Below are positions 1-23,104 of a stretch of 64,000 nt of DNA, one piece after another. Numbering within the stretch: position 1 is the stretch's first letter; every line of letters begins with the position of its first letter. The stretch is from Macrostomum lignano. Taxonomy: Eukaryota. A program made the position numbers and the translations under genes. Location: the NCBI GenBank assembly GCA_002269645.1, contig NIVC01001122.1, positions 62,001 through 126,000 of the forward strand, in the 5' to 3' direction. Under the pieces are notes generated by a model that was not told where the DNA came from, searched no databases, and saw only the letters and a program-made list of their open reading frames with translations.

Positions 1-13
1 TCTGTTTGGGGCT

Positions 14-311
14 CATACATGCGCAACAGTTGGCCGAGTCGGCCGATCCGGCCGACCGATTTGGCGGCCAACCAAGGAAGTCGCAAATATGCCCACCCGA
101 AAAAACACCGAAGTAGTAGTACTAAGTAGCTGACGAGGCATTTTGGCTCAATAAGACAGTCATAGTTACTCCTGCCGTTTACCCGAAGTTGCGTTAATTT
201 TGCTTTAGGGTTTCTTTCCATGTAAGTCGCATTTTTGGCCAAAAACTACGTCGCATTTTTGTTAAAACTAAGTCGCACGGCCGACCGAATTTTGGAGGTT
301 GCGCATGTATG
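14..311. mobile_element. 298-bp MITE (hAT- or P-like) inserted in a 71-bp repeat unit
   Basis: 14-bp TIR CATACATGCGCAAC / GTTGCGCATGTATG; 8-bp TSD TTGGGGCT at 6-13 and 312-319. Confidence 0.9.
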
Positions 312-530
312 TTGGGGCTTTGAATCTTGGAAGGTGGTCCACCTAACCTACAGACACAACTGAAGCAGCTTTCTCAGTCTGTTTGGGGCTTTGACTTTTA
401 TAAGGTGGTCCACCTAACCTACAGACACAACTGAAGCAGCTCTCTCAGTCTGTTTGGGGCTTTGAATCTTGGAAGGTGGTCCACCTAACCTACAGACACA
501 ACTGAAGCAGCTTTCTCAGTCTGTTTGGGG

Positions 531-710
531 CCTTGGCTCTCAGAGCTGTCTTGAAAGTTTAGTGCGGGAATGTTTCCGTTTCTTGGAATGCAATCAGAAC
601 AGATTCTTAGAAAGCGAGCTGGTCCACCATGAGATCAGAATGTCTGCACTGTGTAAATGAATGGTCTCTAGGCATTCCGACTCAGATTATCGCCTAGTAG
701 TGCTGTAGAG
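531..710 (+). repeat. Array module A (about 180 bp), copy 1; further copies at 3844-4023, 7171-7348 and a diverged one at 8255-8432
   Basis: Near-identical sequence in four places. The first three end in GCTGTAGAGAAG, and each carries an internal CTGGTCCACC resembling the repeat core. Confidence 0.92.
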
Positions 711-1252
711 AAGGTGGTCCACCTAACCTACAAACACAACTGGAGCAGCTCTCTCAGTCTGTTTGAGGGTCACACGTAGGGATGTCGACCCCGGGGAGTG
801 CTCCCGGGCCCCGGGGAGCTTGTCGGGGAATATTCCCCGGGGAATTGAACCGGGGACCCCGGGGAGAAAAATGCATTTTTAACCTAATTTTTGCCATTAA
901 AATAAGAAAATAATTTACAGAGAGCTGATTGAAACTCTGTCTATGCTTTTCTTACCGCATAACTGCTTATCTCAATGTAAAATTTCAAACGCAACACACG
1001 TTTGAATGTTTTTTCACTACGAGTCCTTCAATCAAGCAAATTTCACCTAAAAACCCGTCAGGAAAAAGAAGCTTTACTGACTACTGTGTTGGTCTGCGTT
1101 GACGGCTTGACGGAATTTGACGCAGGCACAGCGCTGCGTCCTGCGGACGCATGGGGGTGTCATACAATAACAAAATGCTCCCTATTAGACAAGGACAATG
1201 TCTGCTAGAAATAAAAATTTTGATTATAAAAACGGTCTCATTCATTAATTAT

Positions 1253-1365
1253 CCTCCCACGAGCGTAGCTGCTGAGCATGCATTTTCCGCCTCCACACCA
1301 CAGTCTGGACTCCTTCTGACAAAGGTGCACGCACGATTTGATGATGCCACGTTGTCAAATACAGT
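1253..1365 (+). pseudogene. Remnant of a hAT transposase C-terminal dimerisation domain
   Basis: Translation PPTSVAAEHAFSAS...TKVHARFDDATL matches the hAT PxTSxxxERxFS...RxxLxxxxL pattern. Confidence 0.7.
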
Positions 1366-1591
1366 TTTAAATAAACACAAGCTCCCCGGGGTCGACATCC
1401 CTACTACAACCAAGGGATATAGGCATTTCTTAGGAGCCATTTAAATTTTAAAGTGATCTTATGCGAATTTTAATGTTAAAAGCTTCATGCTGTAACTAAC
1501 TAATTTAGTAGGATTGCATTGTAATCAGTTATTCATTAATTTTTCGCTATTTTTACAAACCATCCCACGTTGTCTTGACTCTTGATTTGCC

Positions 1592-2392
1592 ATCTACTGT
1601 TATAACTGAGCCTGAAGACTTGTCTATACAGAGGACAGTGTTTTGAATCTCTGGCTAAACTGTCTCTCCTCTCTGCGCCTCTCCACTCGCGGGTACAGAG
1701 AAGGCTATTAAAAAGTTATTCCAAAACACTGTACATTCGCTATGTACATTAAGCCCAATCGCCTGACCCTTCGTCTGGGGGTCTGGGCTGGTGGAATGAG
1801 TGAGCGGCACAAACAACAGAAAAAGCAGACAAACTTCACATGCTTACAGTTTCTGTCCTGATTGAGATACAGAGTTGAGACTTTACATTTAGATAGAGAA
1901 TGAGTCAATAAAGAATTGCGTCAAATTTGAAGTCAATCGCTTCACGTGGAGCAAGCTTATGACAGCCGAAAGTTAGTCATTTTAAACCTATTTACACTCC
2001 TTTGCCCAGATCGGGAAAGAGAGGCAGGCGGGCGGAGGTTGGGGTGGTTGCCTCGCTGAAAAAACAGTTAATTTTAAAAGTGCACAGCGCCTTTCAGGAT
2101 TAACTTTGAGACTTGAAATTTTACACGGTTGAAAGGATCGGTAGAAGTGGAGCGGCGCTATGGAGGATTTAGTAAAAAATCGCGCATTTTGAGCAGTTTT
2201 TGCACTTTTAGGTAGGAAGACTTGAGTTTAGGAAATTTTAAGGTAGCCTAAGACATTCTCCGTAGTAAATTTAGGGCGGGTGCAAAAGTTATCGTAATTT
2301 GGTTGAGCGGTTTGGGACTTGGGAGTCCATAGCAAAGTAATTTGTACACAGACACACACGCAGACAGAGTTTTCATTTTTATAGGTAGAGAT
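1592..2392. mobile_element. Possible nested interspersed repeat (Helentron/HINE-like ends) inside the hAT element
   Basis: Begins ATCTACTGTTATAA and ends with a CA/GACA microsatellite-like stretch then TTTTTATAGGTAGAGAT. Resemblance only. Confidence 0.25.
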
Positions 2393-2662
2393 TGTTTAGT
2401 TTTTACCCTTGCGCCTTGAACATGTAGTCTAAAGCTAAAATCAAAGTTTAAAATGCCATTTAAGATCTAAGCCAAAGTTATTCGCCGTTTTTAACTTATT
2501 TTTAATTTTCCCCGGGTCCCCGGGGAATGACAGTAAATTCCCCGGGTCCCCGATAAGAATATTCCCCGGGGAATCGACATCCCTAGTCACACGGATACAC
2601 GGCAGCGGTTTTGAATTTAAGCTTCCGACGTTGACTTGTCTTTTTATTCTCTAACATCCTAG

Positions 2663-2878
2663 GAGCCTGAGTTCGAATTTCATTCTCCTGAGCTCGACCA
2701 GTCTGACGCTTCGAAAAAGTCGAAATCGCGCTCTGCGTCTGCATCACGCCTTGATGAAGGCTCTCAGTTGCACAACGCTACCGCGGATGCAGGCGCTACT
2801 CCAGCCTCGAAGAAGGCCGCATCGCCTGGTGAAAATCGTCGGTCTACTCGCAAATACGTCGACACCGAGTCCAGAAAA
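2663..2878 (+). CDS. Repeated phase 0-0 exon B, copy 1 (72 codons, EPEFEFHSPELDQ...RKYVDTESRK)
   Basis: Preceded by TTTTTATTCTCTAACATCCTAG (branch point + acceptor), followed by GTGAGT; open frame, 216 nt. Confidence 0.7.
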
Positions 2879-3504
2879 GTGAGTTTCGCTTGATGATCTC
2901 AAAGTAGCTAGCTGCAACTCAATTGCTGTAGAGAAGCTCTTAAAAGGTGGTCCACCTAACCTACAGACACAACTGAAGCAGCTCTCTCAGTCTGTTTGGG
3001 GCTTTGACTCTTATAAGGTGGTCCACCTAACCTACAGACACAACTGAAGCAGCTTTCTCAGTCTGTTTGGGGCTTTGACTCTTGGAAGGTGGTCCACCTA
3101 ACCTACAGACACAACTGAAGCAGCTTTCTCAGTCTGTTTGGGGCTTTGACTTTTATACGGTGGTCCACCTAACCTACAGACACAACTGAAGCAGCTCTCT
3201 CAGTCTGTTTGGGGCTTTGACTCTTAAAAGGTGGTCCACCTAACCTACAGACACAACTAAAGCAGCTCTCTCAGTCTGTTTGGGGCTTTGACTCTTGGAA
3301 GGTGGTCCACCTAACCTACAGACACAACTGAAGCAGCTCTCTCAGTCTGTTTGGGGCTTTGACTCTTGGAAGGTGGTCCACCTAACCTACAGACACAACT
3401 GAAGCAGCTCTCTCAGTCTGTTTGAGGGTCACACGGATACACGGCAGCGGTTTTGAATTTAAGCTTCCGACGTTGACTTGTCTTTTTATTCTCTAACTTC
3501 CTAG

Positions 3505-3720
3505 GAGCCCGAGGTCGAATTTCGTTCTCCTGAGCTCGACCAGTCTGAGGCTTCGAAAAAGTTGAAATCGCGCTCTGCGTCTGCATCACGCCTTGATGAA
3601 GGCTCTCAGTTGCACAACGCTACCGCGGATGCAGGCGCTACTCCAGCCTCGAAGAAGGCCGCATCGCCTGGTGAAAATCGTCGGTCTACTCGCAAATACG
3701 TCGACACCGAGTCCAGAAAA
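3505..3720 (+). CDS. Repeated exon B, copy 2 (216 nt)
   Basis: Same splice signals, open frame. Confidence 0.7.
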
Positions 3721-4158
3721 GTGAGTTTCGCTTGATGATCTCAAAGTAGCTAGCTGCAACTCAATTGCTGTAGAGAAGCTCTTAAAAGGTGGTCCACCTA
3801 ACCTACAGACACAACTGAAGCAGCTCTCTCAGTCTGTTTGGGGCCTTGGCTGTCAGAGCTGTCTTGAAAGTTTAGTGCGGGAATGTTTCCGTTTCTTGGA
3901 ATGCAATCAGAACAGATTCTTAGAAAGCGAGCTGGTCCATCATGAGATCAGAATGTCTGCACTGTGTAAATGAATGGTCTCTAGGCATTCCGACTCAGAT
4001 TATCGCCTAGTAGTGCTGTAGAGAAGGTGGTCCACCTAACCTACAGACACAACTGAAGCAGCTCTCTCAGTCTGTTTGAGGGTCACACGGATACACTGCA
4101 GCGGTTTTGAATTTAAGCTTCCGACGTTGACTTGTCTTTTTATTCTCTAACTTCCTAG

Positions 4159-4374
4159 GAGCCCGAGGTCGAATTTCGTTCTCCTGAGCTCGACCAGTCT
4201 GAGGCTTCGAAAAAGTTGAAATCGCGCTCTGCGTCTGCATCACGCCTTGATGAAGGCGCTCAGTCGCACAACGCTACCGCGGATGCAGGCGCTACTCCAG
4301 CCTCGAAGAAGGCCGCATCGCCTGGTGAAAATCGTCGGTCTACTGGCAAATCCGTCGACACCGAGTCCAGAAAA
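4159..4374 (+). CDS. Repeated exon B, copy 3 (216 nt)
   Basis: Same splice signals, open frame. Confidence 0.7.
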
Positions 4375-4882
4375 GTGAGTTTCGCTTGATGATCTCAAAG
4401 TAGCTAGCTGCAACTCAATTGCTGTAGAGAAGCTGGTCCACCTAACCTACAGACACAACTGAAGCAGCTCTCTCAGTCTGTTTGGGGCTTTGAATCTTGG
4501 AAGGTGGTCCACCTAACCTACAGACACATCTGAAGCAGCTTTCTCAGTCTGTTTGGGGCTTTGACTCTTGGAAGGTGGTCCACCTAACCTACAGATACAA
4601 CTGAAGCAGCTCTCTCAGTCTGTTTGGGGCTTTGACTCTTATAAGGTGTCCACCTAACCTGCAGACACAACTGAAGCAGCTCTCTCAGTCTGTTTGGGGC
4701 TTTGACTCTTATAAGGTGTCCACCTAACCTACAGACACAACTGAAGCAGCTCTCTCAGTCTGTTTGGGGCTTTGACTCTTAGAAGGTGGTCCACCTAACC
4801 TACAGTCAAAACTTATGTACTGTTTAGGCGTTTCCGTAATGGAGTAATATGTGAGAAATTTTTTTTATTTTAGTTTCTACAG

Positions 4883-5911
4883 GGCTGTTTGGTCGAGCAG
4901 TTTACATTGGATTCTCTTCGAGGGAAGCGAGTTTTTTTTCTGTACGGCGAAAGTCAAAAGCGACAAAAGAAGCTGGAATCTGCCGTCGTCTATTATGGCG
5001 GAAGCGTTGCTTCGTTTTTTTCAAATGAGGTGTGTAGTTTTTGCAATGCATTCGTTGTTTTTGTTTGTTGCTTGTTAATAGGGCAGATTAGAGACGTTGA
5101 TAGATTTTTTGTAGCTATGGGCTCGTATTTTTTGCTTTTCCAGGTTGATTTAATCATCGCTGACGATTCCGCTGTCTCCATTGAAGCTAAACAATCTTTT
5201 TCGGAGTTTTCTAGGGGTTTCACCATGCAGCAGAGAGCCGTTACGCAAACTTCGAGTTCGCAATGCAGAATTGTCAAAACATTCGAAGATATTTTGACGA
5301 AAGCTCGCTTGCTGCAAATACCTGTCTACACTCCGGCAATATTTCGAGATCGAATTCGCGATCAAGTTTCTCAACACGAGCTGTGCCAGAAAACTATTTC
5401 TTCAGGGAGGTTTGCCGAAGAAGATCGGAATTTGACCCCACCGGCCGTTGTTGTTACGGATGCCCAGCATTTGCTGAGACCAATCTTCAAAGATAACATT
5501 GATGTCGTCGACATTTTTGCAAACCCAAGGGCTAATAATAACGATGAAAAAAATCGTCAAAAGCCTGACGGCAAAGAAAAACGGAAAGGTCGGTGTGAAA
5601 ACTGTCGCGAAGCCTACGACGACTTTAATCAGCACATAACATTAAGCCAAAAGCACCAAGATTTCGTTTCGAATAAAAAAAATTTTACTGAAATCGACCA
5701 AATCATTTCAACTCTTCCGACGCTAGACAGCGCCCTAAATGAAGCGACTCAAAAGGCTACCGCTCCTATGACACATCATGACACGAAAAAACCGGATTCG
5801 AAAGCACTACCTAACATATTTCAGCAAAATGACGGTGATAGACGCCAAGCCGCATCGCTTGGCGAAAATCGTCAGTCTGCTCGCAAATACGTCGACACCG
5901 AGTCCAAAAAA
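4883..5911 (+). CDS. DBF4: Dbf4/ASK/chiffon-like module (Cdc7 kinase activator); exons 4883-5029 and 5144-5911
   Basis: After removing the GT-AG intron 5030-5143: motif N/BRCT-like LRGKRVFFL...YYGGSVASFFSNEVDLII, motif M PPAVVVTDAQHLLRPIFK, motif C zinc finger KGRCENCREAYDDFNQHITLSQKHQDF...IDQII. All junctions are phase 0. Confidence 0.85.
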
Positions 5912-6257
5912 GTGAGTTTCGTTTAATGATCTCAAAATAGCTAGCTGCATGCAACTCAATTGCTGTAGAGAAGTTCTTAAAAGGTGGTCCACCTAAACTA
6001 CAGACACAACTGAAGCAGCTCTCTCAGTCTGTTTGGGGCTTTGACTTTTATAAGGTGGTCCACCTAACCTACAGAAACAACTGAAGCAGCTTTCTCAGTC
6101 TGTTTGGGGCTTTGACTCTTAAAAGGTGGTCCACCTAACCTACAGACACAACTGAAGCAGCTCTCTCAGTCTGTTTGAGGGTCACACGGATACACGGCAG
6201 CGGTTTTGAATTTAAGCTTCCGACTTTGACTTGTCTTTTTATTCTCTAATTTCCTAG

Positions 6258-6482
6258 GAGCCTGAGGTCGAATTTCGTTCCCGCCAAATCGAACGCACTG
6301 GTGCCTCAAAAAGAGGGCGGAAATCGCGAAGCCGTTCGCGCTCTGCATCACGCCTTGATGAAGGCGCTCAGTCGCACAACGCTACCGCGGATGCAGGCGC
6401 TACTCCAGCCTCGAAGAAGGCCGCATCGCCTGGTGAAAATCGTCGGTCTACTCGCAAATACGTCGACACCGAGTCCAGAAAA
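6258..6482 (+). CDS. Repeated exon B variant, copy 4 (225 nt, 75 codons)
   Basis: Same splice signals; net 9-nt in-frame insertion relative to copies 1-3. Confidence 0.7.
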
Positions 6483-7766
6483 GTGAGTTTCGCTTGATGA
6501 TCTCAAAGTAGCTAGCTGCAACTCAATTGCTGTAGAGAAGCTGGTCCACCTAACCTACAGAACAGACGCAACTGAAGCAGCTCTCTCAGTCTGTTTGGGG
6601 CTTTGACTCTTGGAAGGTGGTCCACCTAACCTACAGACACAACTGAAGCAGCTCTCTCAGTCTGTTTGGGGCTTTAACTCTTAAAAGGTGGTCAACCTAA
6701 CCTACAGACACAACTGAAGCAGCTTTCTCAGTCTGTTTGGGGCTTTGACTTTTATAAGGTGGTCCACCTAACCTACAGACACAACTGAAGCAGCTCTCTC
6801 AGTCTGTTTGGGGCTTTGACTTTTATAAGGTGGTCCACCTAACCTACAGACACAACTGAAGCAGCTCTCTCAGTCTGTTTGGGGCTTTGACTTTTATAAG
6901 GTGGTCCACCTAACCTACAGACACAACTGAAGCAGCTCTCTCAGTCTGTTTGGGGCTTTGACTTTTATAAGGTGGTCCACCTAACCTACAGACACAACTG
7001 AAGCAGCTCTCTCAGTCTGTTTGGGGCTTTGACTCTTAAAAGGTGGTCCACCTAACCTACAGACACAACTGAAGCAGCTCTCTCAGTCTGTTTGGGGCTT
7101 TGACTTTTATAAGGTGGTCCACCTAACCTACAGACACAACTGAAGCAGCTCTCTCAGTCTGTTTGGGGCTTTGGCTCTCAGAGCTGTCTTGAAAGTTTAG
7201 TGCGGGAATGTTTCCGTTTCTTGGAATGCAATCAGAACAGATTCTTAGAAAGCGAGCTGGTCCACCATGAGATCAGAACGTCTGCACTGTGTAAATGAAT
7301 GGTCTCAAGGCATTCCGACTCAGATTATCGCCTAGTAGTGCTGTAGAGAAGGTGGTCCACCTAACCTACAGACACAACTGAAGCAGCTCTCTCAGTCTGT
7401 TTGGGGCTTTGACTCTTAAAAGGTGGTCCACCTAACCTACAGACATCAACTGAAGCAGCTCTCTCAGTCTGTTTGGGGCTTTGACTCTTAAAAGGTGGTC
7501 CACCTAACCTACAGACACAACTGAAGCAGCTCTCTCAGTCTGTTTGGGCTTTGACTCTTGAAGGTGGTCCACCTAACCTACAGACACAACTGAAGCAGCT
7601 CTCTCAGTCTGTTTGGGGCTTTGACTTTTATAAGGTGGTCCACCTAACCTACAGACACAACTGAAGCAGCTCTCTCAGTCTGTTTGAGGGTCACACGGAT
7701 ACACTGCAGCGGTTTTGAATTTAAGCTTCCGACTTTGACTTGTCTTTTTATTCTCTAACTTCCTAG

Positions 7767-7992
7767 GAGCCTGAGGTCGAATTTCGTTCCCGCCAAATCG
7801 AACGCACCTGGTGCCTCAAAAAGAGGGCGGAAATCGCGAAGCCGTTCGCGCTCTGCATCACGCCTTGATGAAGGCGCTCAGTCGCACAAACGCTACGCGG
7901 ATGCAGGCGCTACTCCAGCCTCGAAGAAGGCCGCATCGCCTGGTGAAAATCGTCGGTCTACTCGCAAATACGTCGACACCGAGTCCAGAAAA
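7767..7992 (+). CDS. Repeated exon B variant, copy 5 (226 nt; three 1-nt indels, net +1, either error or decay)
   Basis: Same splice signals; CACCTG, CACAAA and CTACGCGG differ from copy 4 by single bases. Confidence 0.5.
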
Positions 7993-8509
7993 GTGAGTTT
8001 CGCTTGATGATCTCAAAGTAGCTAGCTGCAACTCAATTGCTGTAGAGAAGCTGGTCCACCTAACCTACAGAACAGACACAACTGAAGCAGCTCTCTCAGT
8101 CTGTTTGGGGCTTTGACTCTTAAAAGGTGGTCCACCTAACCTACAGACACAACTGAAGCAGCTCTCTCAGTCTGTTTGGGGCTTTGACTCTTGGAAGGTG
8201 GTCCACCTAACCTACAGACACAACTAAAGCAGCTCTCTCAGTCTGTTTGGGGCTTTGGCTCTCAGAGCTGTCTTGAAAGTTTAGTGCGGGAATGTTTCCG
8301 TTTCTTGGAATGCAATCAGAACAGATTCTTAGAAAGCGAGCTGGTCCACCATGAGATCAGAACGTCTGCACTGTCTAAATGAAGGGTGTCTAAACGTTTT
8401 GACTTAGATTATCGCGTTGTAGTGCTTCAGAGAATTGACTTATTGACTTTTCAGGAAAAATGAGCTAATGAGTATATCTAAGCTATGTAACTTGCTGTTT
8501 ATTTTTCAG

Positions 8510-11452
8510 GTTTGCGATAGAGACGGCGATGCTACCAAAGCAAGGATAGACGTTGCTTTTGATTTAGTAGATGATGATTCGTTTGTGGACAAAAATCTTA
8601 CGGTAGTAGACGATATTCTTGGTGGAAGGTTGCACTCAGCTTTAAGGGACATTGCAAATACGAGTATACTACCTGAGGACGCTGAACTCGAGGAAGAAGA
8701 TGGTGATGAAGATTATTATTTGGAGGAAGTCTGGTCTGATGATTTAGTTCCGTCCCAAGCGAAACTTAAGCATGAGAAGAAGAGGCATTGCTGCCTCTTT
8801 TGCGGAGAAATGTTTTCGAAGATCAGAAGGCATCTTATTCGGGCACACTCGAAGGAAATGTGTGTACAGCGCGCCCTCGCATTTAATCCTAAGTCTGATA
8901 GTAAGTTTTTGAAATAAGTTTTTTATGTAGGTCCTCATAGTAGTATTTAGTTTGTCTGAAAATAATTATCTGTTCATATTTTTTTCAGAATATGACCAGG
9001 AATTTGATCGCTTGCGCTTTCGAGGAGATTACGAACATAACATAAAAGTTATGACCCAGGAGAAGGAGGGAGGAATCATTGTGTGTCGCGAAAGAAGTTC
9101 TTCGGACATGAAAGATAATGAAGTTTCGTATTTGCCGTGCATTCACTGTTTTGGATTTTTTCGTAAAACTGAGTTAAGCAGGCATGTTCAGCGCTGCCGC
9201 TTTGTCGTAAATGTCAGCGATTTGAACAGGCGCACAGAAGCTGTCAGTGCAGGACGCTGCCTTCTCCTTGCATCATGCTTTCCGGCGAAATATCCGTCCA
9301 AATTTATTGAACTTATTAATAAAATGAAGGTAGACTCATGTAGCAAAGTAGCTCAATCAGACAAGCTTATAATGGAACTTGGCTACTACGCCTATGAAGG
9401 TTTTACATCCGGAAAGACAGGAAAGAAAATTGTAACTGCGAAAATGCGTGAAATGTCGAGATTACTTATGTCAGCTCGTGAAATTATGGGCGATCCCAGC
9501 GCTTGTCTTGACGATTTGCTGAAGCCATCATCATTTGATTTAGTTGTTGAGGCGACTCGAAATGTAGCGAAATTTACGGCCCAAGAAGATGCTCAGATTT
9601 GCGATTCTTTTTCTATTCCTTCGATGGCACTTAAGTGCGGGTTTTCTCTGAAGCTGGCTGCTGAACTGTCGTTAGTACGTGCCCTGAAATGCGAAATGCC
9701 CGAAGTAGCTCAGGAGCGACGCAACTTCATCACTCTGTATGAAACATCATGGAGCCGTAAAATATCTTCGATTGCACTTTTGTCCTTGAAAGAAAGAAAA
9801 ATTGACAAGGGTCAGACATTGCCGTTAACTAGCGACATTCAGTTAATCACGAAGCACATTAACGAATATTTAAGCCACATCGACACGGAAAAGCTAAAAA
9901 GCAGCCCTTCTTACTGGAAAGAGGTGGCCGAATATGTTGCGATTCGTTTGTCTATTTTCAACAAGCGCCGGGCGTCTGAGCCCTTCAAGCTGCGAGTTTC
10001 GGCGTGGCAGAAAGCAAGATCATGCAAAGATGTTGATGATACAACATTATCTGCGCTAAGTGAATTAGAAAAGCAAATGCTTTACCGGTTGACTATCGTT
10101 AATGTTCGAGGTAAGAGAGCACAGCGACCGGTTCCTCTGCTAGTTTCGAATGAGATTGCTGAAATTATCGATGAGCTCATTCGCACAAGACACCACGCTT
10201 CAAGTCCTTACGTATTCTGCAGTAGTGGAAGTTTGGGATATATATCCCCATTCGTTGCGCGCACAAATGTTGTCTCCAGTTGTCAAGGGCTCCAGTTCCC
10301 TGCTCGTCTATCTTCGACCAACCTTCGAAAATACATTGCCACTGTCTCTCAGATCCTTGAAATGAGAGAAAATGAGCTCGGATGGCTCTCCAACCATCTT
10401 GGACATAGCCTTAATGTTCACCATAATTTCTATCGATTGCATGAAAACACTATTGAGCTTGCTAAAGTAGGCAAGCTACTTCTGGCTATCGAGGCCGGTA
10501 GATTCGACCAGCTTAAAGGCAAAACTATCGAAGAGATTGATGTTAACGACATCGAAATTGACTATGACATTGACGATAAGTCAGATGCAAAAAAAGATGA
10601 TTTGAACGAATCCGGTGATGTGGAAGCCTCAATAGGCTCACAGGCTCGAGAATTAAAACGTGGTGACCAAAAGAGTCAAGCACCTCCTGAGAATAATGGA
10701 GCTCGTATCCAAGCTAAGGAATTTGAGGACGAGTCAATTTATCACGAAGGTTCTGTCGACTTTCGCGGAGCCCCCCTGTCCATCAAGCAAGTCGAAAAAA
10801 AGAAGAATCGATTAGCTGTGCTCGACTCAGATGAATATGAAAGCGAAGTAGACAAAGACGATTCAGACTACCAACCGACGAAAAAAACCAGAAAAGTGCA
10901 GAAAGCTAGAGCAAACGAAAGGCGGATTCGAAGGACGACTAAGCCAAAGGGTGCGACAGCAACAACGACTAATAACAAAAGCGAGCCAGGACATGGACAA
11001 GAGGACCCACAGAAGGACAAAAGCGAGCCAGGACCCGGACAAGAGGACCCACAGAAGGACAAAAGCGAGCCAGGACCCGGACAAGAGGACCCACAGAAGG
11101 ACAAAAGCGAGCCAGGACCCGGACAAGAGGACCCACAGAAGGACAAAAGCGCTCCTAGTTCGGAAGGTAAGGACAAAATGGGAACTGGGGGAAGAAAAAA
11201 ACCAAAGTTGATTTCAGTTACTTCAATCCATTTCAGAAGTCAAGAAAAAAACTAATTCAGGAGCACATTGCGTGGAACAAAGACGAAAATGAGGCAATTA
11301 ACCGCGCGATAGAAAAGATCGAAGACGGCAAAGTACCTGGTTTTGCAGCCCTTGGAGAGCTAAAAGCACGCGAACCTGCACTCCAGTCACGATCGATCCA
11401 TAAAATAAAAACGAAGTTTTTCAATGAAATGAAAAAACGCGGCATTTTGTGA
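8510..11452 (+). CDS. Tyrosine recombinase with two N-terminal zinc-finger-like motifs and a C-terminal SANT/Myb-like domain; exons 8510-8900, 8989-11166 and 11237-11452
   Basis: Motifs FNKRRASE (R), VRGKR (K), STNLRK (R), NHLGH...NFY (H, Y); CLFC...H...H and CIHC...H...C fingers; last exon HIAWNKDENEA...GKVPG...PALQSRS..IK. Both introns are GT-AG phase 1. One extra A in the A7 run near 11245 must be removed to keep frame. Confidence 0.88.
10980..11150 (+). repeat. Coding 42-bp tandem repeat x4 (SEPGPGQEDPQKDK) in the YR tail
   Basis: Read directly. Confidence 0.95.
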
Positions 11453-11649
11453 CTAAACGCTTTATGATTGCTAACACTAAGATTAAAAAGCATCTATTAG
11501 TTTAGCTGACAAGAAATACCTGTTCACTATCGATAGCATAGCGATGGCTTTTGGGGGCGGTCCAAGTTTGGGACGCCAAACTGAGTATGAGGGGCGCCAA
11601 TTTTTAAGCTGGGGGTGCAAAAAACGTGTAGGGGGGGGGGGAATGCGAG

Positions 11650-12060
11650 TCGCCGTTTTAAAAATGCTTCAATTTCTTGTATCTGTTTGATACAATTTCC
11701 ATTTTAATAACTGTCGCCGTTTTAAAAATGCTTCAATTTCTTGTATCTGTTTTATACAATTTCCATTTTAATAACTGTTGCCCTTTTAAAAATGCTTCAA
11801 CTTCTTGTACTCCCTATGACTTTTTTAACTAATGCAATCCTAAGTTTGTTAAACGTGTAGTTTAAGAATGTACTTCCGGACTTAAATTAGTTTCAATGAC
11901 TTTGCAGTTAGTTTAATTAGGTTTAAATCTTTTGCGTTAAGGCAAGCGAAATGATTCGGTATTTATTTTCAAAATGCTTCAATTTCTTATATCTGTTTGA
12001 TACAATTTCCATTTTAATAACTGTTGCCGTTTTAAAAATGCTTCAACTTCTTGTATCCCT
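11650..12060. repeat. About 64-bp AT-rich subterminal direct repeats (GCCGTTTTAAAAATGCTTCAATTTCTTGTATCTGTTTGATACAATTTCCATTTTAATAACT)
   Basis: Copies near 11650, 11713, 11777 and 11970-12055. Confidence 0.85.
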
Positions 12061-12490
12061 GAGTGTGCGTTGTTTTTCTTTCGTAACTAATGCAGTTTAA
12101 CCCATAGTTTAGTAAAGCTAAATAAATTCGTTTGAACCAGGGTTTTTTTAATAAAATGGAATCGTAAACCTTTTTTATCTTCTGTTTCTTGAGAATTTCT
12201 GTTTTAATTAGCCCAAAATAACAGTTTGAAACTCATAAATTTTCTACAAAGAAAGAGGTCTAACTAAACCAACTGTTTTTTTGCGGTCCACCTAACCCGG
12301 TCCCCAAAACGTAGTTAGTGAACCGCCACAGTTTCCACGAACTGGCTATTCCGTCAAGTTAACAAAAAGATAACCCTAGCTAGCCTTTCGCGTTGTCAAA
12401 ACAGACTCTATTTTTTAACCGGAATTGCGTGGTCCACGTAACGCATTAACATAACTCAGGTCCCGCTAAACACACAGACAGTCGTAAGAG

Positions 12491-12538
<48 letters not shown>
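12491..12538. repeat. (TGTC)12 microsatellite, probable insertion target of the YR element
   Basis: Directly abuts the element end. Confidence 0.9.
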
Positions 12539-12539
<1 letters not shown>

Positions 12540-12564
12540 TGCCAACCCGTCTTCCCAGACTCAC

Positions 12565-15500
12565 CTGCGCCGGCAGTCAGGAAAGGACTCCTCAGTGAGC
12601 AGGCTGCCGTAGGCGGTCTGCGGCCCCAGCGCGGGCGGGAAGGCGCCCACCTGTGACATGATTAGCGACAGCAGGCACTCGGCCGCCTGGGCCAGCCGTG
12701 CGGAATGCGGGCTCTTCTGTTTGCGCCACTTCGGCTCGAACCTGGTGGCCTCGCCTCGGTGCTCGACGCGCGACTTGGAGCCCGACAAGCCCAGCTCGAT
12801 GATCTCCAGCAGGCAGATGAGGGTGTCCTCATCTAGCAGTAGCTGGGGATAGTTTAGCGCCCACTGGGCCAAGCAGTCGTACGTGGCCACGATTTGCGAG
12901 TGCAGGTAGCGCGAGTGCTCCTGCCTGGGCCGGGCGCACTGGCTGCTAATGAAGTCGCACAGCCAGCGGACGCAGCTTTTCAACAGGTTCTGCGTGTTGT
13001 GCGGCCCGCCGAATGAGCTCTGCGTTTGGGCGCGGGGGATGTACTTTAGTGGCCTCGCGAGAACTCTAGCGAGGAATTACAGAAGGACAGGAATTTCAGT
13101 TGCCAATGCTTAATGACAGAATCTATATTTACACTACTTTACTGGTGCACCCAGCTGGCTGTAAAATGGGTGCTGGGGTAATTGAGGGTGCGTGTGGCGA
13201 CCCCCAGTCCTTGTACTGAACAGCCGTACGCAGCCTTCAGATGCGCCGCGCAATAGCTGCGGCTGAGCTGTCGGTTGCACATCAATTATTATTATTATAT
13301 ACTGGACCAGCAACCGGCTGCGCCAGCCCCAGCTACAGCAGCTGGCACTGGACTATGCCAGCAACCGGCTGCGCCAGCCCCAGCTACAGCAGCTGGCACT
13401 GGACTATGCCAGCAACCGGCTGCGCCAGCCCCAGCTACAGCAGCTGGCACTGGACCATGCCAGCAACCAGCTGCGCCAGCCCCAGCTACAGCAGCTGGCA
13501 CTGAACTATGCCAGCAACCGGCTGCGCCAGCCCCAGCTACAGCAGCTGGCACTGGACCATGCCAGCAACCATAAATATTTTCCCAACGTTAGCCGATTAA
13601 ATTGGTGAAGGAGGCCGCTCACCTGTCCGATTGGCAGTCTGGCCAGGTGGCTCAACACGTCCAATGCAGTCAGGGTGGTGTCGTAGTCCATCTTCAGGGC
13701 GGAGTCGTGCTCAAGGTTGAGCCGCTTGCAGATTGCCGCAACTGCCTGGGTGAACAGCTTCTGCACCGAGTCTGCTAGGGGTGGGGTTGGGATTTTGGTG
13801 GGGCTGGGCGAGGCCGCGTTTTAGATTGCAGGGGTTGGGGATGAACTCGGCTTCAAAAAGATATAGGATTAGAGGCGAAGAATGGTGATTGGGTTGGTTT
13901 AAATTAATCTAATTGATTTGATGAACTGATTTATAATTATTTCATCATACATATTCTAAACTTCAACTGCTGAATTAGTGGAAAGAATGCCTGAGAAGGG
14001 GAATATGCGATCAAACAGATCATGAGGAAGTTATGACATTGAAAAGGGGATAAAAAATCATGGGATTAAATAAGGAAACTCTTGGGATAGAATAGGGGAA
14101 TTATTGGATCAAATAGGGGAATTATTTGATCGAATAGGGAATTACGGCATCGAATAGGGAATTATGGCATTGAATAGATTAAGGAATCGAATAAGGGATT
14201 TAAGGATCGAATAAGAGATTTAAGGGATCGAATAGGGGATTTAAAGGATCGAATAGGGGATTTAAGGGATCGAATAGAGGATTTAAGGGATCGAATAGGG
14301 GATTTAAGGGATCGAATAGGGGAATTATTTTATCGAATAGGGGATTTAAGGGATCGAATAGGGGATTTAAGGGATCGAATAGGGGATTTAAGGGATCGAA
14401 TAGGGGAATTATTTTATCGAATAGGGGATTTAAGGGATCGAATAGGGGATTAAAAGGATCGAATAAGAGATTTAAGGGATCGAATAGGGGATTTAAAGGA
14501 TCGAATAGGGGATTTAAGGGATCGAATAGAGGATATAAGGGATCGAATAGGGGATTTAAGGGATCGAATAGGGGATTTAAGGGATCGAATAGGGGATTTA
14601 AGGGATCGAGTAGGAAGGAGAACCATTGGGATGATTGAGATAAATGAACTTAAAAAATACCTGGCGCTTTGGGCACGGCGCGAACGCCTGCATCCGTGCA
14701 GGACTCGTCGCTGTGCACCAAATTCTCGTAGCTGGCCAAGTCTTCAGCTATGCAAAGCAGAGCGCACAGCAGCATCTGCACGCAGTGGGAGTCCCTCAAC
14801 AACAGCAGAGTGTCCAGCACCAGCACCACAATGTCCTGACGAAGCGACAGGAATGTACGCGGCGCCGACCGACTGTCCAACGGGTGGAGAATCTCCGATT
14901 GGCCGAAATGATTGGGCAGGGCGATCATGGAAAGCAGGAGGCGAACCGCGGACCGTTGCAGGTCGACAGGTGTTGGCACGCCGCTGGGCAAGTTGCTGAT
15001 GGAGTCCTGCTGCATAGGGATTGAAAGCCACATTCCACTTAGAATATTATATATTATTCCAATATTAGATTTGGAATATTAGCATTGGGATTTGGAAAAT
15101 TAGCATAGGGATTTGGAATGTTAGCATTGGGATTTGGAAAATTAGCATAGGGATTTGGAATGTTAGCATTGGGATTTGGAAAATTAGCATAGGGATTTGG
15201 AATGTTAGCATTGGGATTTGGAAAATTAGCATAGGGATTTGGAATGTTAGCATAGGGATTCGGAATGTTAGCATAGGGATTCGGAATGTTAGCATAGGGA
15301 TTTGGAATGTTAGCATAGGGATGTGGAATATTACCATCGGGATTTTGAATATTAGCCTTGGGATTTGGAATATTAGCATAGGGATTTGGAATATTAGCAC
15401 AGGGATTTGGAATATTAGCACAGGGATTTGGAATATTAGCCTTGGGATTTGGAATATTAGCCTTGGGATTTGGAATATTAGCCTTGGGATTTGGAATATT

Positions 15501-18500
15501 AGCATTGGGATTTGGAATATTAGCATTGGGATTTGGAATATTAGCATTAAGATTTGGAATATTAGCATTGGGATTTGGAATATTAGCATTGGGATTTGGA
15601 ATATTAGCATTGAGATTTGGAATATTAGCATAGGGATTTGGAATGTTAGCATAGGGATTTGGAATATTAGCCTTGGGATTTGGAATATTAGCATAGGGAT
15701 TTGGAATATTAGCCTTGGGATTTGGAATATTAGCATAGGGATTTGGAATATTAGCATTGGGATTTGGAATATTAGCATTGGGATTTGGAATATTAGCATT
15801 GGGATTTGGAATATTAGCATTGGGATTTGGAATATTAGCATTGAGATTTGGAATATTAGCATAGGGATTCGGAATGTTAGCATAGGGATTTGGAATATTA
15901 GCCTTGGGATTTAGAATATTAGCATAGGGATTTGGAATATTAGCCTTGGGATTTGGAATATTAGCCTTGGGATTGGGAATATTAGCATAGGGATCGGAAT
16001 GTTAGCATAGGGATTTGGAATATTAGCCTTGGGATTTGGAATATTAGCATAGGGATTTGGAATATTAGCATAGGGATTCGGAATGTTAGCATAGGGATTT
16101 GGAATATTAGCATTGGGATTTAATATTAGCATAGGGATTTGGAATATTAGCCTTGGGATTTGGAATGTTAGCATTGGGATTAGGAAAATTAGCATAGGGA
16201 TTTGGAATATTAGCCTTGGGATTGGGAATATTAGCATAGGGATACGGAATGTTAGCATAGGGATTTGGAATATTAGCCTTGGGATTTGGAATATTAGCAT
16301 AGGGATTTGGAATATTAGCCTTGGGATTTGGAATATTAGCCTTGGGATTGGGAATATTAGCATAGGGATTTGGAATATTAGCATAGGGATTTGGAATATT
16401 AGCCTTGGGATTTGGAATATTAGCCTTGGGATTGGGAATATCATGCTTTAGGAATAGCAACCAGCCTTGAAATTCGTGTTGTTGCAGTTAAACTTTGATC
16501 CCTAAAGAAATTTGAACAACTCAGCTGATACCAACCTTCAGTATATAATGCACAGCTTTAAAATAGCTTGGCAGTAGAACGTGCACGCCTTTAAGTCCGG
16601 CTGACAGCAGGCCCTGTGAGTGGTACACAACTGTATTCAACAGCAGCGGCTGCAGCGGCGGCTCCAGTGCGTTGAACATGGCGGCGTAGAACCTGAACAA
16701 AATTCAATTTAAATGCAGTGCTTTAATATGGCTGACAGTAGTGCACTGCGAAAATGCTAGTGAACAAAACTATTGTTGGAATAGCAAACAATTCGCATAC
16801 ATAAGCTTACAGAACATCCATTTTAGCATTAAAAAGCGACTCATGTATTTGCTAACCAGAAGTGTCACTGACAAACGGTGTCACTGACTAAAAATGTCAC
16901 TGACTAAAAATGCCACTGACTAAAAATGTCACTGACTAAAAATGTCACTGAATAAACTGTCACTGACTAAAAATGCCACTGACTAACGGTGTCACTGACT
17001 AAAAATGTCACTGACTAAAAATGCCTCTGACTAAAAATGCCACTGACCAACAGTGTCACTAACGGTGTCTCTCTGACTAAAAATGCCACTGACCAACAGT
17101 GTCACTAACGGTGTCTCTCTGACTAAAAATGCCACTGACTAAAAATGCCACTGACTAAAAATGTCACTGACTAAAAATGTCTCTGACTAAAAATGCCACT
17201 GACTAAAAATGTCTCTGACTAAAAATGTCACTGACTAAAAGTGTCTCTGACTAAAATTGTCACTGACTAAAATGTCACTGACTAAAAATGTCACTGACTA
17301 AAAATGTCACTGACTAAAAATGTCACTGACTAAAAATGTCTCTGACTAAAAATGCCACTGACTAAAAATGTCACTGACTAACTGTGTCACTGACTAACTG
17401 TGTCACTGACTAAAAATGTAACTAAACATAATCTAGAAAATCACTAAAAATCACTGATCAAGTGTCACTGACTAAAAATATCACTGATAGAGTGTCACTA
17501 AATAAAATGTCACTGAATAAAATTTCACTAATCAAGCGTCACTGACTAAAATATCACTGATCAAGTGTCACTGACTAAAATTTCACTAATCAAGCGTCAC
17601 TGACTAAAATATCACTGATCAAGTGTCACTGACTAAAATTTCACTAATCAAGTGTCACTGACTAAAATATCACTGATCAAGTGTCACTAAATAAAATGTC
17701 ACTGAATAAAATTTCACTAATCAAGCGTCACTGACTAAAATATCACTGATCAAGTGTCACTAAATAAAATGTCACTGAATAAAATTTCACTAATCAAGCG
17801 TCACTGACTAAAATATCACTGATCAAGTGTCACTGACTAAAATTTCACTAATCAAGTGTCACTGACTAAAATATCACTGATCAAGTGTCACTAAATAAAA
17901 TGTCACTGAATAAAATTTCACTAATCAAGCGTCACTGACTAAAATATCACTGATCAAGTGTCACTAAATAAAATGTCACTGAATAAAATTTCACTAATCA
18001 AGCGTCACTGACTAAAATATCACTGATCAAGTGTCACTGACTAAAATATCACTGATCAAGTGTCACTAAATAAAATGTCACTGAATAAAATTCCACTAAT
18101 CAAGTGTCACTGACTAAAATATCACTGATCAAGTGTTACTGACTAAAAATATCACTGATTAAGCGTCACTGAATAAAATGTCACTGAAGAAAATGTCACT
18201 GATCAAAATGTCACTGACTAAAAATATCACTGATCAAGTGTCACTGGCTAAAATATCACCGATTAAGTGTGTCACTGACTAAGATGTCACTGATTAAGTG
18301 TCACTGACTAAGCCAAAAGCCACTGCAGTGAGCAGCCCAATAGTCACCTGGCCAAGTAGACGGGCAGAAAATCGGGCCGGCAGTTGGCAAAAAGCCTGCA
18401 GAGGCAGCCGCAGGCCTCGGCCCGGCCCAGCTGATAGGCCGGGTCCGACACCCCGGCGCAGTCGAACAGCCAGGAGCCAATCAGGTGAAGCAGAGAATTG

Positions 18501-22119: not shown

Positions 22120-23104
22120 GCCGCCATGCAATACAGTGTGGGATAGAGCAGATACAAAATTGGTTAATTCCTAACATTTAGCCCAATTTGGCACCTGGAT
22201 TCAAGGTAAACACAACCATTTACTATAACAATCGATCAGAATTGTTAAGCATATAGTGTTTTCATTGGAAACCTATGAAGAAAAATAAGGTCAACATTAG
22301 GCTTTAAAAGGATATAAAATATGTTGCAAGAAAAAATTCTAAAATTGGAATTTAGTAGCTAAAGCTAATAGAATATATACAAGCTATTTATATATACAAA
22401 ATCATGCTATGGCTTATGTACATACACAAGTTACAAGTTGTACATACACATACATACACCTGTTATGTACAGGCTGTGTGGCTTACTTTTTTAACCAAAA
22501 ATGCGACTTACGTATGAAAAAAACCTAAGAAAATAAACATAATTTTGGGTAAACAGGGAGTAACTATGACTGTATTATTGAGGCCAAATACTTGGCCATC
22601 TAATAATTACTACATGCAGATTTTTGGGTGGGCATTTTTGTGACTTACCTTGGCTGGGCCCTCTGGCTTGGCCGGGTGTTGCGCATGCATGCTATGTATA
22701 GTGGAAACTTAGTTATTTCTATTGCTATTGGCAGGGACTTTTGCAATAAATTAACACAGAAGGGATAGAAAGCTTGACTATAGTGATTAGCAGTAGGAAT
22801 ACCAATTTTTCCGCCTATCACACTACCAAGGGGGGGATCCCTTCCCAACAATTTTTCGCTACACCAGAATGGAGCAACGCAGACACATGAACTTCAAGAA
22901 CTGTGGCTAACTTTTTTGTTGCACACCTTCTCAAACAAGAATCAAGTCGCCAGCCCTCCGAATTATCGAGATATTCAACTATTGTGCTAGAAGATAGGAT
23001 TTTTCCCATAAGCACTAATGTATTAAATACAGCGCAAATCAGCAATGCACCTCAGTGCAGCCTTGCCAAGGCTCCAAATTTCATCAGAACATTGATTGGT
23101 TGCA

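What the first reader, a model, noticed from the sequence alone, without database searches (positions are those of the whole stretch)
331..8432. Repeat array carrying in-frame exon cassettes next to a recombinase (integron-like architecture in an animal)
Seen: blocks of 71-bp repeats separate discrete modules (order A, B, B, A, B, Dbf4, B', A, B', A', YR). Each B module carries its own acceptor, a symmetric phase 0-0 exon and a donor. B and B' differ by an in-frame 9 nt, suggesting selection on frame. Inference: recombination between any two repeats would add, delete or excise whole exons without a frameshift, so the array could work as a cassette system that varies linker length and Dbf4 presence. 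The adjacent YR is the obvious candidate catalyst; ordinary unequal crossover is the null model.
Basis: partly seen in the sequence, partly recalled or inferred. Interest (0 to 1): 0.85.

Follow-up and report, generated by a model that had tools for sequence, protein, structure and literature searches.

The report
Exon-and-repeat array inside a recombinase transposon
The repeat-and-exon array is real, but it is the front half of the recombinase gene of a flatworm jumping gene that lands in (TGTC)n microsatellites; its exon number differs widely between copies, and ordinary homologous exchange explains this without recombinase-driven cassette swapping.

Summary
In window 331-8432, arrays of a 71-bp repeat separate modules in the order A, B, B, A, B, Dbf4, B', A, B', A'. 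They are followed by a gene whose product has a tyrosine-recombinase (YR) fold and catalytic residues. The organism is Macrostomum lignano.

Three points were missed:
- The B, B' and Dbf4 exons are 5' coding exons of the YR gene itself. Exon 1 lies upstream of the window.
- The unit is a transposon. Two Dbf4-type and three sister chromo-type copies lie in unrelated flanks. Each has imperfect 24-bp inverted ends and (TGTC)n outside every end available.
- Every 71-bp unit carries one copy of the motif GGTCCACSTAAMC, which is conserved at both element ends. The sister element (YR 50% identical) has the same layout with unrelated 84-bp units and an unrelated exon.

Exon counts vary between >99% identical copies: B 3-4, B' 2-5, sister exon 3, 10 or 25. 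The traceable exchange points lie inside exons or unique DNA. The units carry single, same-orientation half-sites and do not fold like attC.

Homology-driven unequal exchange is the best explanation. YR-driven cassette shuffling is unproven but not excluded. I rate this a new variant of Crypton-like YR transposons.

The parts
1..13 (+). 3' end of a further 71-bp unit, showing that the array runs off the left edge of the window
   Evidence: Direct reading. The matching upstream part (exon 1 and more modules) is seen in L001.
14..312 (.). MITE inserted into a 71-bp unit. It has 14-bp inverted ends (CATACATGCGCAAC) and an 8-bp target duplication (TTGGGGCT). It is absent from the L001 copy.
   Evidence: the query 'mite0' has no hit in L001.
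313..540 (+). 71-bp repeat array, 3.2 units, each with one GGTCCACCTAACC motif
530..715 (+). Module A, copy 1. It is intronic, has stops in all frames and is not used in the gene models.
711..768 (+). Single truncated 71-bp unit leading into B1
777..2585 (.). hAT-like non-autonomous insertion in the intron upstream of B1. It has TAGGGATGTCGA... inverted ends and an 8-bp target duplication GTCACACG (769-776 and 2586-2593). The L001 copy carries the same insertion.
   Evidence: 99.5% identical, same position in L001
2663..2878 (+). Exon B1, 216 nt, phase 0-0
2937..3427 (+). 71-bp repeat array, 7 units
3505..3720 (+). Exon B2, 216 nt, phase 0-0
3786..3851 (+). Single 71-bp unit
3843..4028 (+). 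Module A, copy 2
   Evidence: 98.9% identical to copy 1
4024..4081 (+). Single truncated 71-bp unit
4159..4374 (+). Exon B3, 216 nt, phase 0-0. It carries the 'STGKS' 3' variant that reappears on B' exons in L001.
4428..4813 (+). 71-bp repeat array, 5.4 units. The last unit is cut after about position 18-31 by the Dbf4 segment.
4883..5029 (+). Dbf4 module, exon a. Phase 0-0. An alternative acceptor lies at 4874.
   Evidence: Model P0029 starts at this acceptor.
5144..5911 (+). Dbf4 module, exon b, containing a DBF4-type zinc finger. Its last ~65 nt and the following intron start are the same sequence as the 3' end of a B exon.
   Evidence: Pfam zf-DBF E=5.4e-16
5975..6180 (+). 71-bp repeat array, 3 units
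6258..6482 (+). Exon B'1, 225 nt, phase 0-0
6538..7178 (+). 71-bp repeat array, 9 units. The first is a 76-bp variant.
7168..7353 (+). Module A, copy 3
7349..7689 (+). 71-bp repeat array, 5 units, with homopolymer indels
7767..7992 (+). Exon B'2, 226 nt, frameshifted with stops. It differs from intact B' by three homopolymer-length indels.
8048..8262 (+). 71-bp repeat array, 3 units
8252..8434 (+). Module A', 92% identical to A. It is the last intronic module before the conserved part of the gene.
8510..8900 (+). YR gene exon with the acidic stretch and the first C2H2-like zinc finger (KKRHCCLFC...RRHLIRAH)
8989..11166 (+). Main YR exon. It holds the second zinc finger, the core-binding-like helices and the catalytic domain. 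Catalytic residues: R 9966-9971, K 10113-10115, R 10326-10328, H 10395-10397, Y 10431-10433. The tail has a 42-nt x4.2 coding repeat.
   Evidence: Invariant residues; AlphaFold2 pLDDT 84.5; Foldseek top 11 hits are all YRs
11237..11452 (+). Last exon. As assembled it stops at 11290-11292 because an A7 run (11245-11251) shifts the conserved C-terminal Myb-like domain out of frame. With A6 it would read through to 11450-11452.
12257..12482 (+). Right subterminal region with four motif copies (12257, 12285, 12431, 12459). It ends in the right inverted end GGTCCCGCTAAACACACAGACAGT (12459-12482).
12491..12539 (+). (TGTC)12 microsatellite at the right boundary. Homology with the L001 copy ends here.

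Best explanation
Window <1-12490 is most of one copy of a roughly 16-kb DNA transposon of Macrostomum lignano. The transposon encodes a single, intron-containing tyrosine-recombinase gene and no reverse transcriptase.

Shown:
- The element has imperfect 24-bp inverted ends.
- The motif GGTCCACSTAAMC is clustered at both ends, with its spacing conserved between two diverged sister elements.
- (TGTC)n lies directly outside all nine ends available. The window copy's left end lies outside the window.
- Copies lie in unrelated flanks.
- The flagged region is the 5' half of the YR gene. Exon 1 (outside the window), 3-4 B exons, a two-exon Dbf4-type zinc-finger segment and 2-5 B' exons are all phase 0-0. 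They are separated by introns filled with tandem 71-bp units that each carry one copy of the end motif.

Inferred:
- The motif is the binding site of the element's own protein (the YR or its zinc fingers), and the intronic arrays are accessory binding-site arrays kept by selection.
- Because the arrays and exons form long head-to-tail homologies, unequal sister-chromatid or ectopic homologous exchange, gene conversion and replication slippage change unit and exon number quickly.
- The phase-0/0 exons let any number be spliced in. The visible result is a recombinase with an N-terminal disordered, basic and serine-rich linker of variable length, plus captured chromatin or replication-targeting domains (Dbf4 here, chromo or PRMT_C in relatives).
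- Insertion probably follows the Crypton model: a YR-made circle recombines with a short TGTC match in the target.
For: Species and gene:
- P0002 is 100% and P0001 99% identical to the window ORF.
- Models P0001, P0029 and P0031 splice the B, Dbf4 and B' exons onto the YR exons in the predicted frame.
- Exon 1, with its ATG, is at L001:3358-3516 and ends in the same ~65 nt as B.

YR identity:
- R, K, R, H and Y are invariant in 23 homologues.
- The AlphaFold2 model has pLDDT 84.5.
- The Foldseek top 11 PDB hits are all YRs: XerA E=5e-4, XerH, IntI, lambda Int, HP1 Int.

Mobility:
- Window and L001 are 99.4-100% identical up to window 12504 / L001 18222 and unrelated beyond.
- The sister element lies at three loci with unrelated flanks.
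- The junction sequences next to (TGTC)n are constant within each element type at all nine ends available; the window copy's left end is outside the window.
- The two ends co-vary within each element: ACACAGACAGT in one type, ACACATACACT in the other.

Motif:
- 66 matches in L001 against 2.8 expected, 43 against 1.7 in the window, 29 against 0.8 in L002.
- In the end alignments the motifs are conserved islands in otherwise diverged DNA, with the same spacing.
- The motif is the only part shared by the 71-bp and 84-bp units.

Homology-driven exchange:
- Four-gamete mosaics occur inside the B/B' exon, and three B'(STGKS) chimeras are followed by B-type repeats.
- L010 shows regular higher-order periods of 1232 bp, plus or minus one unit.
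- The junction of L010's 6-kb duplication lies in unique DNA with a short duplication.
Against: - No experiment or read-level data were available. Repeat counts come from assemblies and could be partly collapsed.
- Window and L001 could in principle be one locus with a misjoin at the microsatellite. The MITE present only in the window argues against this.
- Binding of the protein to the motif is inferred, not shown.
- The same array architecture recurs in two families with unrelated exons and unrelated unit sequence. Passive minisatellite behaviour alone does not explain this, which leaves room for a motif-linked, possibly YR-linked, process.
- As assembled, both Dbf4-type copies have a frameshifted C-terminal domain, so current activity of this subfamily is uncertain.
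Confidence: 0.7

Rival explanations
1. First reader's model. The element's YR binds the motif in the 71-bp units and itself catalyses, or triggers by nicking, recombination between units. Exon-plus-repeat segments are then excised as circles, deleted, duplicated or reinserted. This would be an intron-embedded cassette system that diversifies the recombinase's N-terminus.
For: - Each unit carries the element's conserved end motif in the orientation of the right end.
- The architecture is conserved in a sister element that shares only the motif.
- Exon number changes are extreme between >99% identical copies: 3, 10 or 25.
- All exons are phase 0-0.
- The protein has an intact YR catalytic set.
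Against: - Exchange points lie inside exons and in unique DNA.
- Module junctions fall at different positions of the unit.
- Units hold one half-site each, never an inverted pair around a 6-8-bp spacer. Such a pair exists only near the left end (L001 2128-2161, L002 9090-9123).
- There is no attC-like fold (z = +0.5 to -0.2).
- The regular 1232-bp higher-order units fit long-homology exchange.
- No circles or read-level data are available.
Confidence: 0.15
2. Assembly artefact. The order and number of modules, or the array as a whole, result from misassembly of repetitive long reads.
For: - Five homopolymer indels cluster in 7497-7900.
- A7 versus A6 in the last exon.
- Three assemblies or models give three different arrangements.
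Against: - The same module types, junctions and nested hAT insertion occur in an independent assembly.
- Independent gene models contain the exons.
- The sister element shows the same design at three loci.
- Units carry consistent diagnostic variants.
Confidence: 0.05
3. A domesticated, immobile host gene that happens to have an intronic minisatellite. The copies would be products of the recent genome duplication of M. lignano rather than of transposition.
For: - Copy number is low.
- The gene contains introns and has fused host-like domains.
- M. lignano is known to carry recent large-scale duplications (general knowledge).
Against: - Flanks are unrelated on every side available, immediately outside constant junctions in (TGTC)n.
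- The inverted ends co-vary within each element.
- Subterminal motif clusters have conserved spacing.
- The element lies antisense inside an intron of a RalGAPB-like gene.
Confidence: 0.05

Closest known systems
Crypton DNA transposons (Goodwin et al. 2003; Kojima & Jurka 2011, PMC3212892; active CryptonF in Chlamydomonas, PMC9977147)
   Same: - A eukaryotic DNA element whose only enzyme is a YR, with no reverse transcriptase.
- The gene may contain introns.
- A short sequence (here TGTC) repeats directly at both boundaries and matches the target, as in the circle-plus-microhomology insertion model.
- N-terminal DNA-binding additions occur.
   Different: - Cryptons are described as lacking terminal inverted repeats. 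This element has 24-bp imperfect inverted ends plus subterminal motif clusters.
- The target is a microsatellite.
- The motif arrays and duplicated exons lie inside the gene.
- There is no Pfam DUF3504 or Phage_integrase hit for the window protein.
- The box strings of this family are absent from the published CryptonA/I alignment.
- The HxxR histidine is replaced (STNLRKY).
Integrons (IntI, attI, attC cassettes)
   Same: A YR gene lies next to an ordered array in which repeated sites alternate with coding modules. Recombination between sites would gain or lose whole modules.
   Different: - The modules are exons of the YR gene, not promoterless genes.
- The sites are 71-bp tandem units with one half-site each and do not form attC-like hairpins.
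- There is no attI.
- The YR gene is co-oriented with the array and downstream of it.
- No evidence shows the YR acting on the units.
- The host is eukaryotic, and the IntI structure is only one of several equally distant YR fold matches.
Subterminal-repeat transposons (En/Spm-CACTA, Ac, Foldback) - general knowledge
   Same: Many copies of a short transposase-binding motif are clustered near both ends, in defined orientations. In Foldback they are expanded into tandem arrays.
   Different: Those elements use DDE-type or other non-YR transposases. Their motif arrays are terminal and non-coding, not spread through the introns of the transposase gene between duplicated exons.
Simple-repeat-specific YR integration of endogenous nimaviruses (PMC10871703)
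   Same: A YR with a C2H2 zinc-binding domain is associated with insertion into a simple repeat, (TAACC)n there and (TGTC)n here.
   Different: Those are giant viral genomes and their YR family was reported as distinct from Cryptons. No relatedness to this family was tested here.
In-frame exon arrays that vary by unequal homologous exchange, such as the human LPA kringle IV-2 repeat (general knowledge)
   Same: These are head-to-tail higher-order units containing symmetric exons. Copy number varies widely between alleles while the frame is kept, and the units are homogenised by gene conversion.
   Different: Here the array sits in a mobile element's recombinase gene, and the intronic filler is an array of that element's own end motif.

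Membership tests
Tyrosine recombinase superfamily | Catalytic residues R-K-H-R-H/W-Y in the conserved order | tested here: met
   R124/R125, K173, R244, H267 and Y279 are invariant in the 23-sequence alignment A2 (window codons confirmed). The histidine of HxxR is T/S/N in this family, so 5 of 6 positions are met.
Tyrosine recombinase superfamily | Catalytic-domain fold | tested here: met
   AlphaFold2 model pLDDT 84.5, pTM 0.70. The Foldseek PDB top 11 hits are all YRs (XerA 5hxy E=5.4e-4, probability 1.0; XerH; IntI 2a3v; lambda Int; HP1), followed by topoisomerase IB.
Tyrosine recombinase superfamily | Sequence-profile match (Pfam Phage_integrase or a PDB HMM) | tested here: not met
   The window protein has no Pfam hit. 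One homologue reaches E=0.021, and another has a precomputed PF00589 hit. There is no PDB profile hit to a YR.
Crypton (YR DNA transposon) | Encodes a YR and no reverse transcriptase or other transposase | tested here: met
   ORF lists of the window 1-16000 and of L001 1-3900 show only the YR gene plus a nested hAT remnant. Only 3 ORFs were scanned with Pfam.
Crypton (YR DNA transposon) | Several copies in different genomic places | tested here: met
   There are two Dbf4-type and three chromo-type copies with unrelated flanks.
Crypton (YR DNA transposon) | [quoted passage not shown] | tested here: met
   TGTC repeats lie directly outside all nine ends available; the window copy's left end lies outside the window.
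Crypton (YR DNA transposon) | No terminal inverted repeats | tested here: not met
   20/24 (Dbf4-type) and 21/25 (chromo-type) matching inverted ends that co-vary within each element.
Crypton (YR DNA transposon) | YR groups with CryptonA/I/F/S in a phylogeny | tested here: inconclusive
   No tree could be built. The family's box strings (NKRR, LRKY, HLGH) are absent from the published animal alignment, which is noisy PDF text. Box I resembles it only loosely: RRGRE versus KRRxGE.
Integron | attC-type recombination sites (imperfect palindromes that fold as single strands) flanking each cassette | tested here: not met
   ssDNA folding of the 71-mer in two registers and of the 84-mer gives z = +0.52, -0.18 and -0.11 against shuffles. 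All units are direct repeats.
Integron | Cassettes are promoterless genes inserted at an attI next to a divergently oriented intI | tested here: not met
   The modules are spliced exons of the co-oriented YR gene.
Integron | Integrase-dependent excision and insertion of cassettes | not testable with these tools
   This needs circle detection or a recombination assay.
Dbf4/Drf1 (DDK regulatory subunit) | C-terminal DBF4-type zinc finger (motif C) | tested here: met
   Pfam zf-DBF E=5.4e-16, 58.8 bits against a cut-off of 24.8.
Dbf4/Drf1 (DDK regulatory subunit) | Motifs N (BRCT-like) and M | tested here: inconclusive
   There are no Pfam hits for these motifs at E<=0.1. The resemblance was seen by eye only.

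The most novel reading that the evidence does not exclude
The intronic arrays are working recombinase sites. The element's YR binds the end motif in every 71-bp or 84-bp unit and cuts or exchanges strands there. Transposon copies would then continually gain, lose and reshuffle in-frame exons of their own recombinase gene, including captured host domains such as Dbf4. This would be a eukaryotic, spliceosome-compatible counterpart of integron cassette dynamics, and possibly a route by which these elements capture host exons.
Probability: 0.15. Interest if true: 0.9.

Novelty: new variant of a known kind. Interest (0 to 1): 0.62.

Why it matters
- Eukaryotic YR DNA transposons (Cryptons) are poorly understood because their ends and binding sites are usually undefinable. 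This family offers defined inverted ends, a conserved 13-bp motif with fixed spacing, a candidate lox-like core site and a simple-repeat target. It sits in a laboratory flatworm with transgenic tools, so the insertion mechanism becomes directly testable.
- It shows that a transposon's own recombinase gene can carry a hypervariable in-frame exon array (3 to 25 copies among >99% identical copies).
- It shows repeated N-terminal capture of chromatin or replication modules (Dbf4 zinc finger, chromodomain, PRMT_C), which suggests target or timing control.
- For genome annotation, these loci produce inflated, unstable gene models (902 to 1855 aa for one gene) and should be treated as transposon genes.

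Tried and rejected
- attC-like or other single-strand structure of the units: no better than shuffles.
- Known RNA families in 1-13000: none.
- Pfam on the YR ORF and on 23 homologues: no usable YR hit and no DUF3504.
- PDB profile search: only zinc-finger noise.
- Fold search with the full 577-aa model: weak (XerA E about 6e-3). The catalytic-region model was needed.
- Homology between exon B and the sister element's exon X: none (E=0.49). The cassettes are therefore not an inherited exon.
- Source of the Dbf4 segment: the search returned only models of this same locus, probably because low-complexity words filled the candidate list.
- Distant homologues from metagenomes, a firefly and bivalves (L003-L008): single ORFs without comparable 5' arrays, and ends not definable. 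One pair ends in a SINE-like repeat. The architecture is therefore shown only in Macrostomum.
- Literature: no paper describes YR elements of Macrostomum.
- Rejected: 'A' as an exon, because it has stops in all frames and is unused in the models.
- Rejected: the 9-nt B/B' difference as evidence of selection on frame, because it results from a block replacement and chance would preserve the frame roughly one time in eight.

Full report
**1. What is in the window**

TRF and BLAST with consensus units find 39 full or partial copies of a 71-bp unit between 331 and 8262, and none elsewhere in the 64 kb. The units form seven arrays and three single units.

The arrays separate four copies of a 186-bp non-coding module (A, A'), five copies of a ~360-bp module (B x3, B' x2) and one 1.16-kb module with a DBF4-type zinc finger (Pfam zf-DBF E=5.4e-16).

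Each B or B' has a polypyrimidine/AG acceptor, an open exon and a GTGAGT donor. The exon lengths are 216, 216, 216, 225 and 226 nt.
- The 226-nt exon (7767-7992) is frameshifted. All five indels in 7497-7900 are homopolymer length changes, so I read them as probable consensus errors.
- B and B' differ by a net 9 nt, but through replacement of a ~60-nt block.
- The Dbf4 segment is two phase-0 exons (4883-5029, 5144-5911). Its last ~65 nt and the following intron start are the same sequence as the 3' end of B.
- Two unrelated small transposons are nested in the array: a MITE at 14-312 and a hAT-like element at 777-2585.

**2. The array belongs to the recombinase gene**

The ORF at 8952-11255 matches Macrostomum lignano proteins at 99-100%. 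Three independent gene models (P0001, P0029, P0031) splice B, Dbf4 and B' exons to each other and to the exon starting at 8510, in the frame deduced here.

The same element in the Mlig_3_7 assembly (L001) shows the missing 5' end. Exon 1 has an ATG at L001:3358 and ends in the same ~65 nt as B, followed by the same intron start. The flagged region is therefore the intron-rich 5' half of the recombinase gene, not a separate array beside it.

**3. The protein is a tyrosine recombinase of an uncharacterised family**
- Sequence profiles fail.
- In an alignment of 23 homologues, R, K, R, H and Y are invariant in the expected order.
- The AlphaFold2 model of the catalytic region is confident (pLDDT 84.5).
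- Its 11 best PDB fold matches are all tyrosine recombinases, followed by topoisomerase IB.
- Upstream lie two C2H2-like zinc fingers. Downstream lies a conserved Myb-like domain, which is out of frame in the window and in L001 because of an A7 run.
- Relatives occur in cnidarians, bivalves and beetles. Some carry other N-terminal additions: a chromodomain in P0003 and PRMT_C in P0015.

**4. The whole unit is a transposon**

Window and L001 are 99.4-100% identical through the YR gene and 1.25 kb downstream. Homology stops inside a (TGTC)n run (window 12504, L001 18222), and the DNA beyond is unrelated.

L001 also has (TGTC)n at its left boundary. A sister element whose YR is 50% identical (P0003) lies at three loci (L002, L009, L010) with unrelated flanks. 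Within each element type the junctions next to (TGTC)n are constant at every end available.

The ends are imperfect inverted repeats and co-vary within each element:
- Dbf4-type, both ends: ...TAAACACACAGACAGT
- chromo-type, both ends: ...AA(A/C)CACACATACACT

In the window the element lies antisense in an intron of a RalGAPB-like gene. The direct TGTC repeats at both boundaries fit the Crypton model of YR-mediated insertion through a short match with the target. The inverted ends do not fit the published description of Cryptons.

**5. What the 71-bp repeats are**

The motif GGTCCACSTAAMC occurs once in every 71-bp unit, always on the + strand. It also clusters at both ends of the element. Counts are 66 matches in L001 against 2.8 expected, 43 against 1.7 in the window and 29 against 0.8 in L002.

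Alignment of the ends of the two sister elements shows the motif copies as conserved islands in otherwise diverged DNA, with the same spacing: offsets 0, 33, 51, 64, ~208, 230 and 254 at the left end. One inverted pair with an 8-bp spacer, a lox/FRT-like layout, lies about 210 bp inside the left end of both elements. It is outside the window.

The sister element also has intronic arrays, of 83-85-bp units that share only this motif with the 71-bp unit. These arrays separate tandem copies of an unrelated 387-nt phase-0/0 exon.

The design of motif arrays in the 5' introns with duplicated symmetric exons between them is therefore a family trait. The motif is very probably a protein-binding site of the element. 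That last step is an inference.

**6. How the array varies, and by what process**

Arrangements of the Dbf4-type element:
- Window: ...A, B, B, A, B, Dbf4, B', A, B', A'
- L001: exon 1, A, B, A, B, A, B, A, B, Dbf4, B', B', A, B', B', A, A', with different unit counts
- P0031, a third assembly: exon 1, B, B, B, Dbf4, about five B'

The sister element has 3, 10 and 25 copies of its exon at >99% identity.

The traceable exchanges are homology-type:
- The B/B' alignment shows all four combinations of the B or B' core with the STRKY or STGKS 3' variant. The three B'(STGKS) exons of L001 are followed by the repeat variants that normally follow B. That crossover lay inside the exon.
- L010 is built of regular 1232-bp higher-order units (7 units plus the exon) that vary by plus or minus one unit.
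- L010 also contains a 6-kb duplication whose junction lies in unique DNA with a short local duplication.

Other points against site-specific exchange at the units:
- Module-to-repeat junctions fall at different positions of the unit.
- The units carry single half-sites in one orientation.
- They do not fold better than shuffled sequence.

Nothing here requires the YR. Nothing excludes that YR binding or nicking at the arrays raises the exchange rate.

**7. Verdict**

The integron analogy is apt as a picture but not as membership or as a demonstrated mechanism.

The best-supported reading has two parts. The locus is a (TGTC)n-targeting, Crypton-like YR transposon. Its recombinase gene has intronic arrays of the element's end motif, and these make its N-terminal exons hypervariable by unequal homologous exchange.

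Not found in the literature searched:
- the inverted ends with fixed-spacing motif clusters
- the microsatellite target
- the exon arrays
- the Dbf4 fusion

I therefore rate it a new variant of a known kind.

Limits:
- All counts come from assemblies.
- The left end of the window copy is outside the window.
- Binding, splicing and activity are inferred.

Noticed in passing
window 14-312: MITE with 14-bp inverted ends (CATACATGCGCAAC...GTTGCGCATGTATG) and an 8-bp target duplication TTGGGGCT, inserted into a 71-bp unit. It is absent from the L001 copy, so it arrived after the two copies separated.
   Followed up: partly
window 777-2585: hAT-like non-autonomous element with TAGGGATGTCGA... ends and an 8-bp duplication GTCACACG. 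An extra internal end lies near 1380-1404, and a 97-aa ORF at 1151-1444 has no Pfam hit. The L001 copy has it at the identical position, so it moved or duplicated together with the YR element.
   Followed up: partly
window 11245-11251 (also in L001): An A7 run puts the family's conserved C-terminal Myb-like domain out of frame, giving a stop at 11290-11292. Gene models from another assembly (P0002, P0031) read it in frame. This is either a real inactivating change shared by both copies or a homopolymer consensus error.
   Followed up: partly
window 10975-11151: A 42-nt unit repeated 4.2 times inside the YR tail encodes KSEPGPGQEDPQKD repeats. This is another in-frame tandem repeat in the same gene.
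   Followed up: no
window 11649-11809 and 11966-12057: 64-bp repeats in the 3' untranslated part of the element, between the stop codon and the right subterminal motifs.
   Followed up: no
L001 2128-2161 and L002 9090-9123: An inverted pair of the end motif separated by exactly 8 bp, with a third motif 10-11 bp further on. It sits at the same distance from the left end in both sister elements. The layout is lox/FRT-like and is a candidate core recombination site.
   Followed up: partly
L010 10001-46224; L009 2901-16594: Copies of the chromo-type sister element carry 25 and 10 tandem copies of a 387-nt exon. This gives a 36-kb 'gene' in L010, which also contains a 6-kb internal duplication restarting within the left-end region.
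   Followed up: yes
window 12561-22131, minus strand: Exons of a RalGAPB-like host gene (Pfam RALGAPB_N at 18344-18949 and 21307-22131). The YR element lies antisense in one of its introns, and the (TGTC)12 run starts 26 nt from the donor of the exon at 12561-12983. The introns hold many other tandem repeats, with periods of 16, 21, 28, 30 and 51 bp.
   Followed up: partly
window 35196-45523: A 10.3-kb satellite of a 37-bp unit (278 copies, 97% matches) with strong negative GC skew.
   Followed up: no
window 47868-51587, minus strand: An intact 1239-aa Ty3/Gypsy-type polyprotein ORF with protease, RT, RNase H and integrase Pfam hits. Long simple repeats flank it: (AGT)n, (ATCT)n up to 2.2 kb, and a purine-rich 74/226-bp array at 54823-57233.
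   Followed up: partly
window 25428-29725, minus strand: A run of ORFs of 161-392 aa with no Pfam hits. One has Cys/His-rich stretches. They may belong to another unclassified element or gene.
   Followed up: no
L003 14750-14790: A distant homologue's locus (metagenome contig) has CAGACAGACAAACACACACACAGT about 2.3 kb downstream of its YR ORF. This resembles the Macrostomum end sequence TAAACACACAGACAGT, but it may be chance in low-complexity DNA.
   Followed up: no
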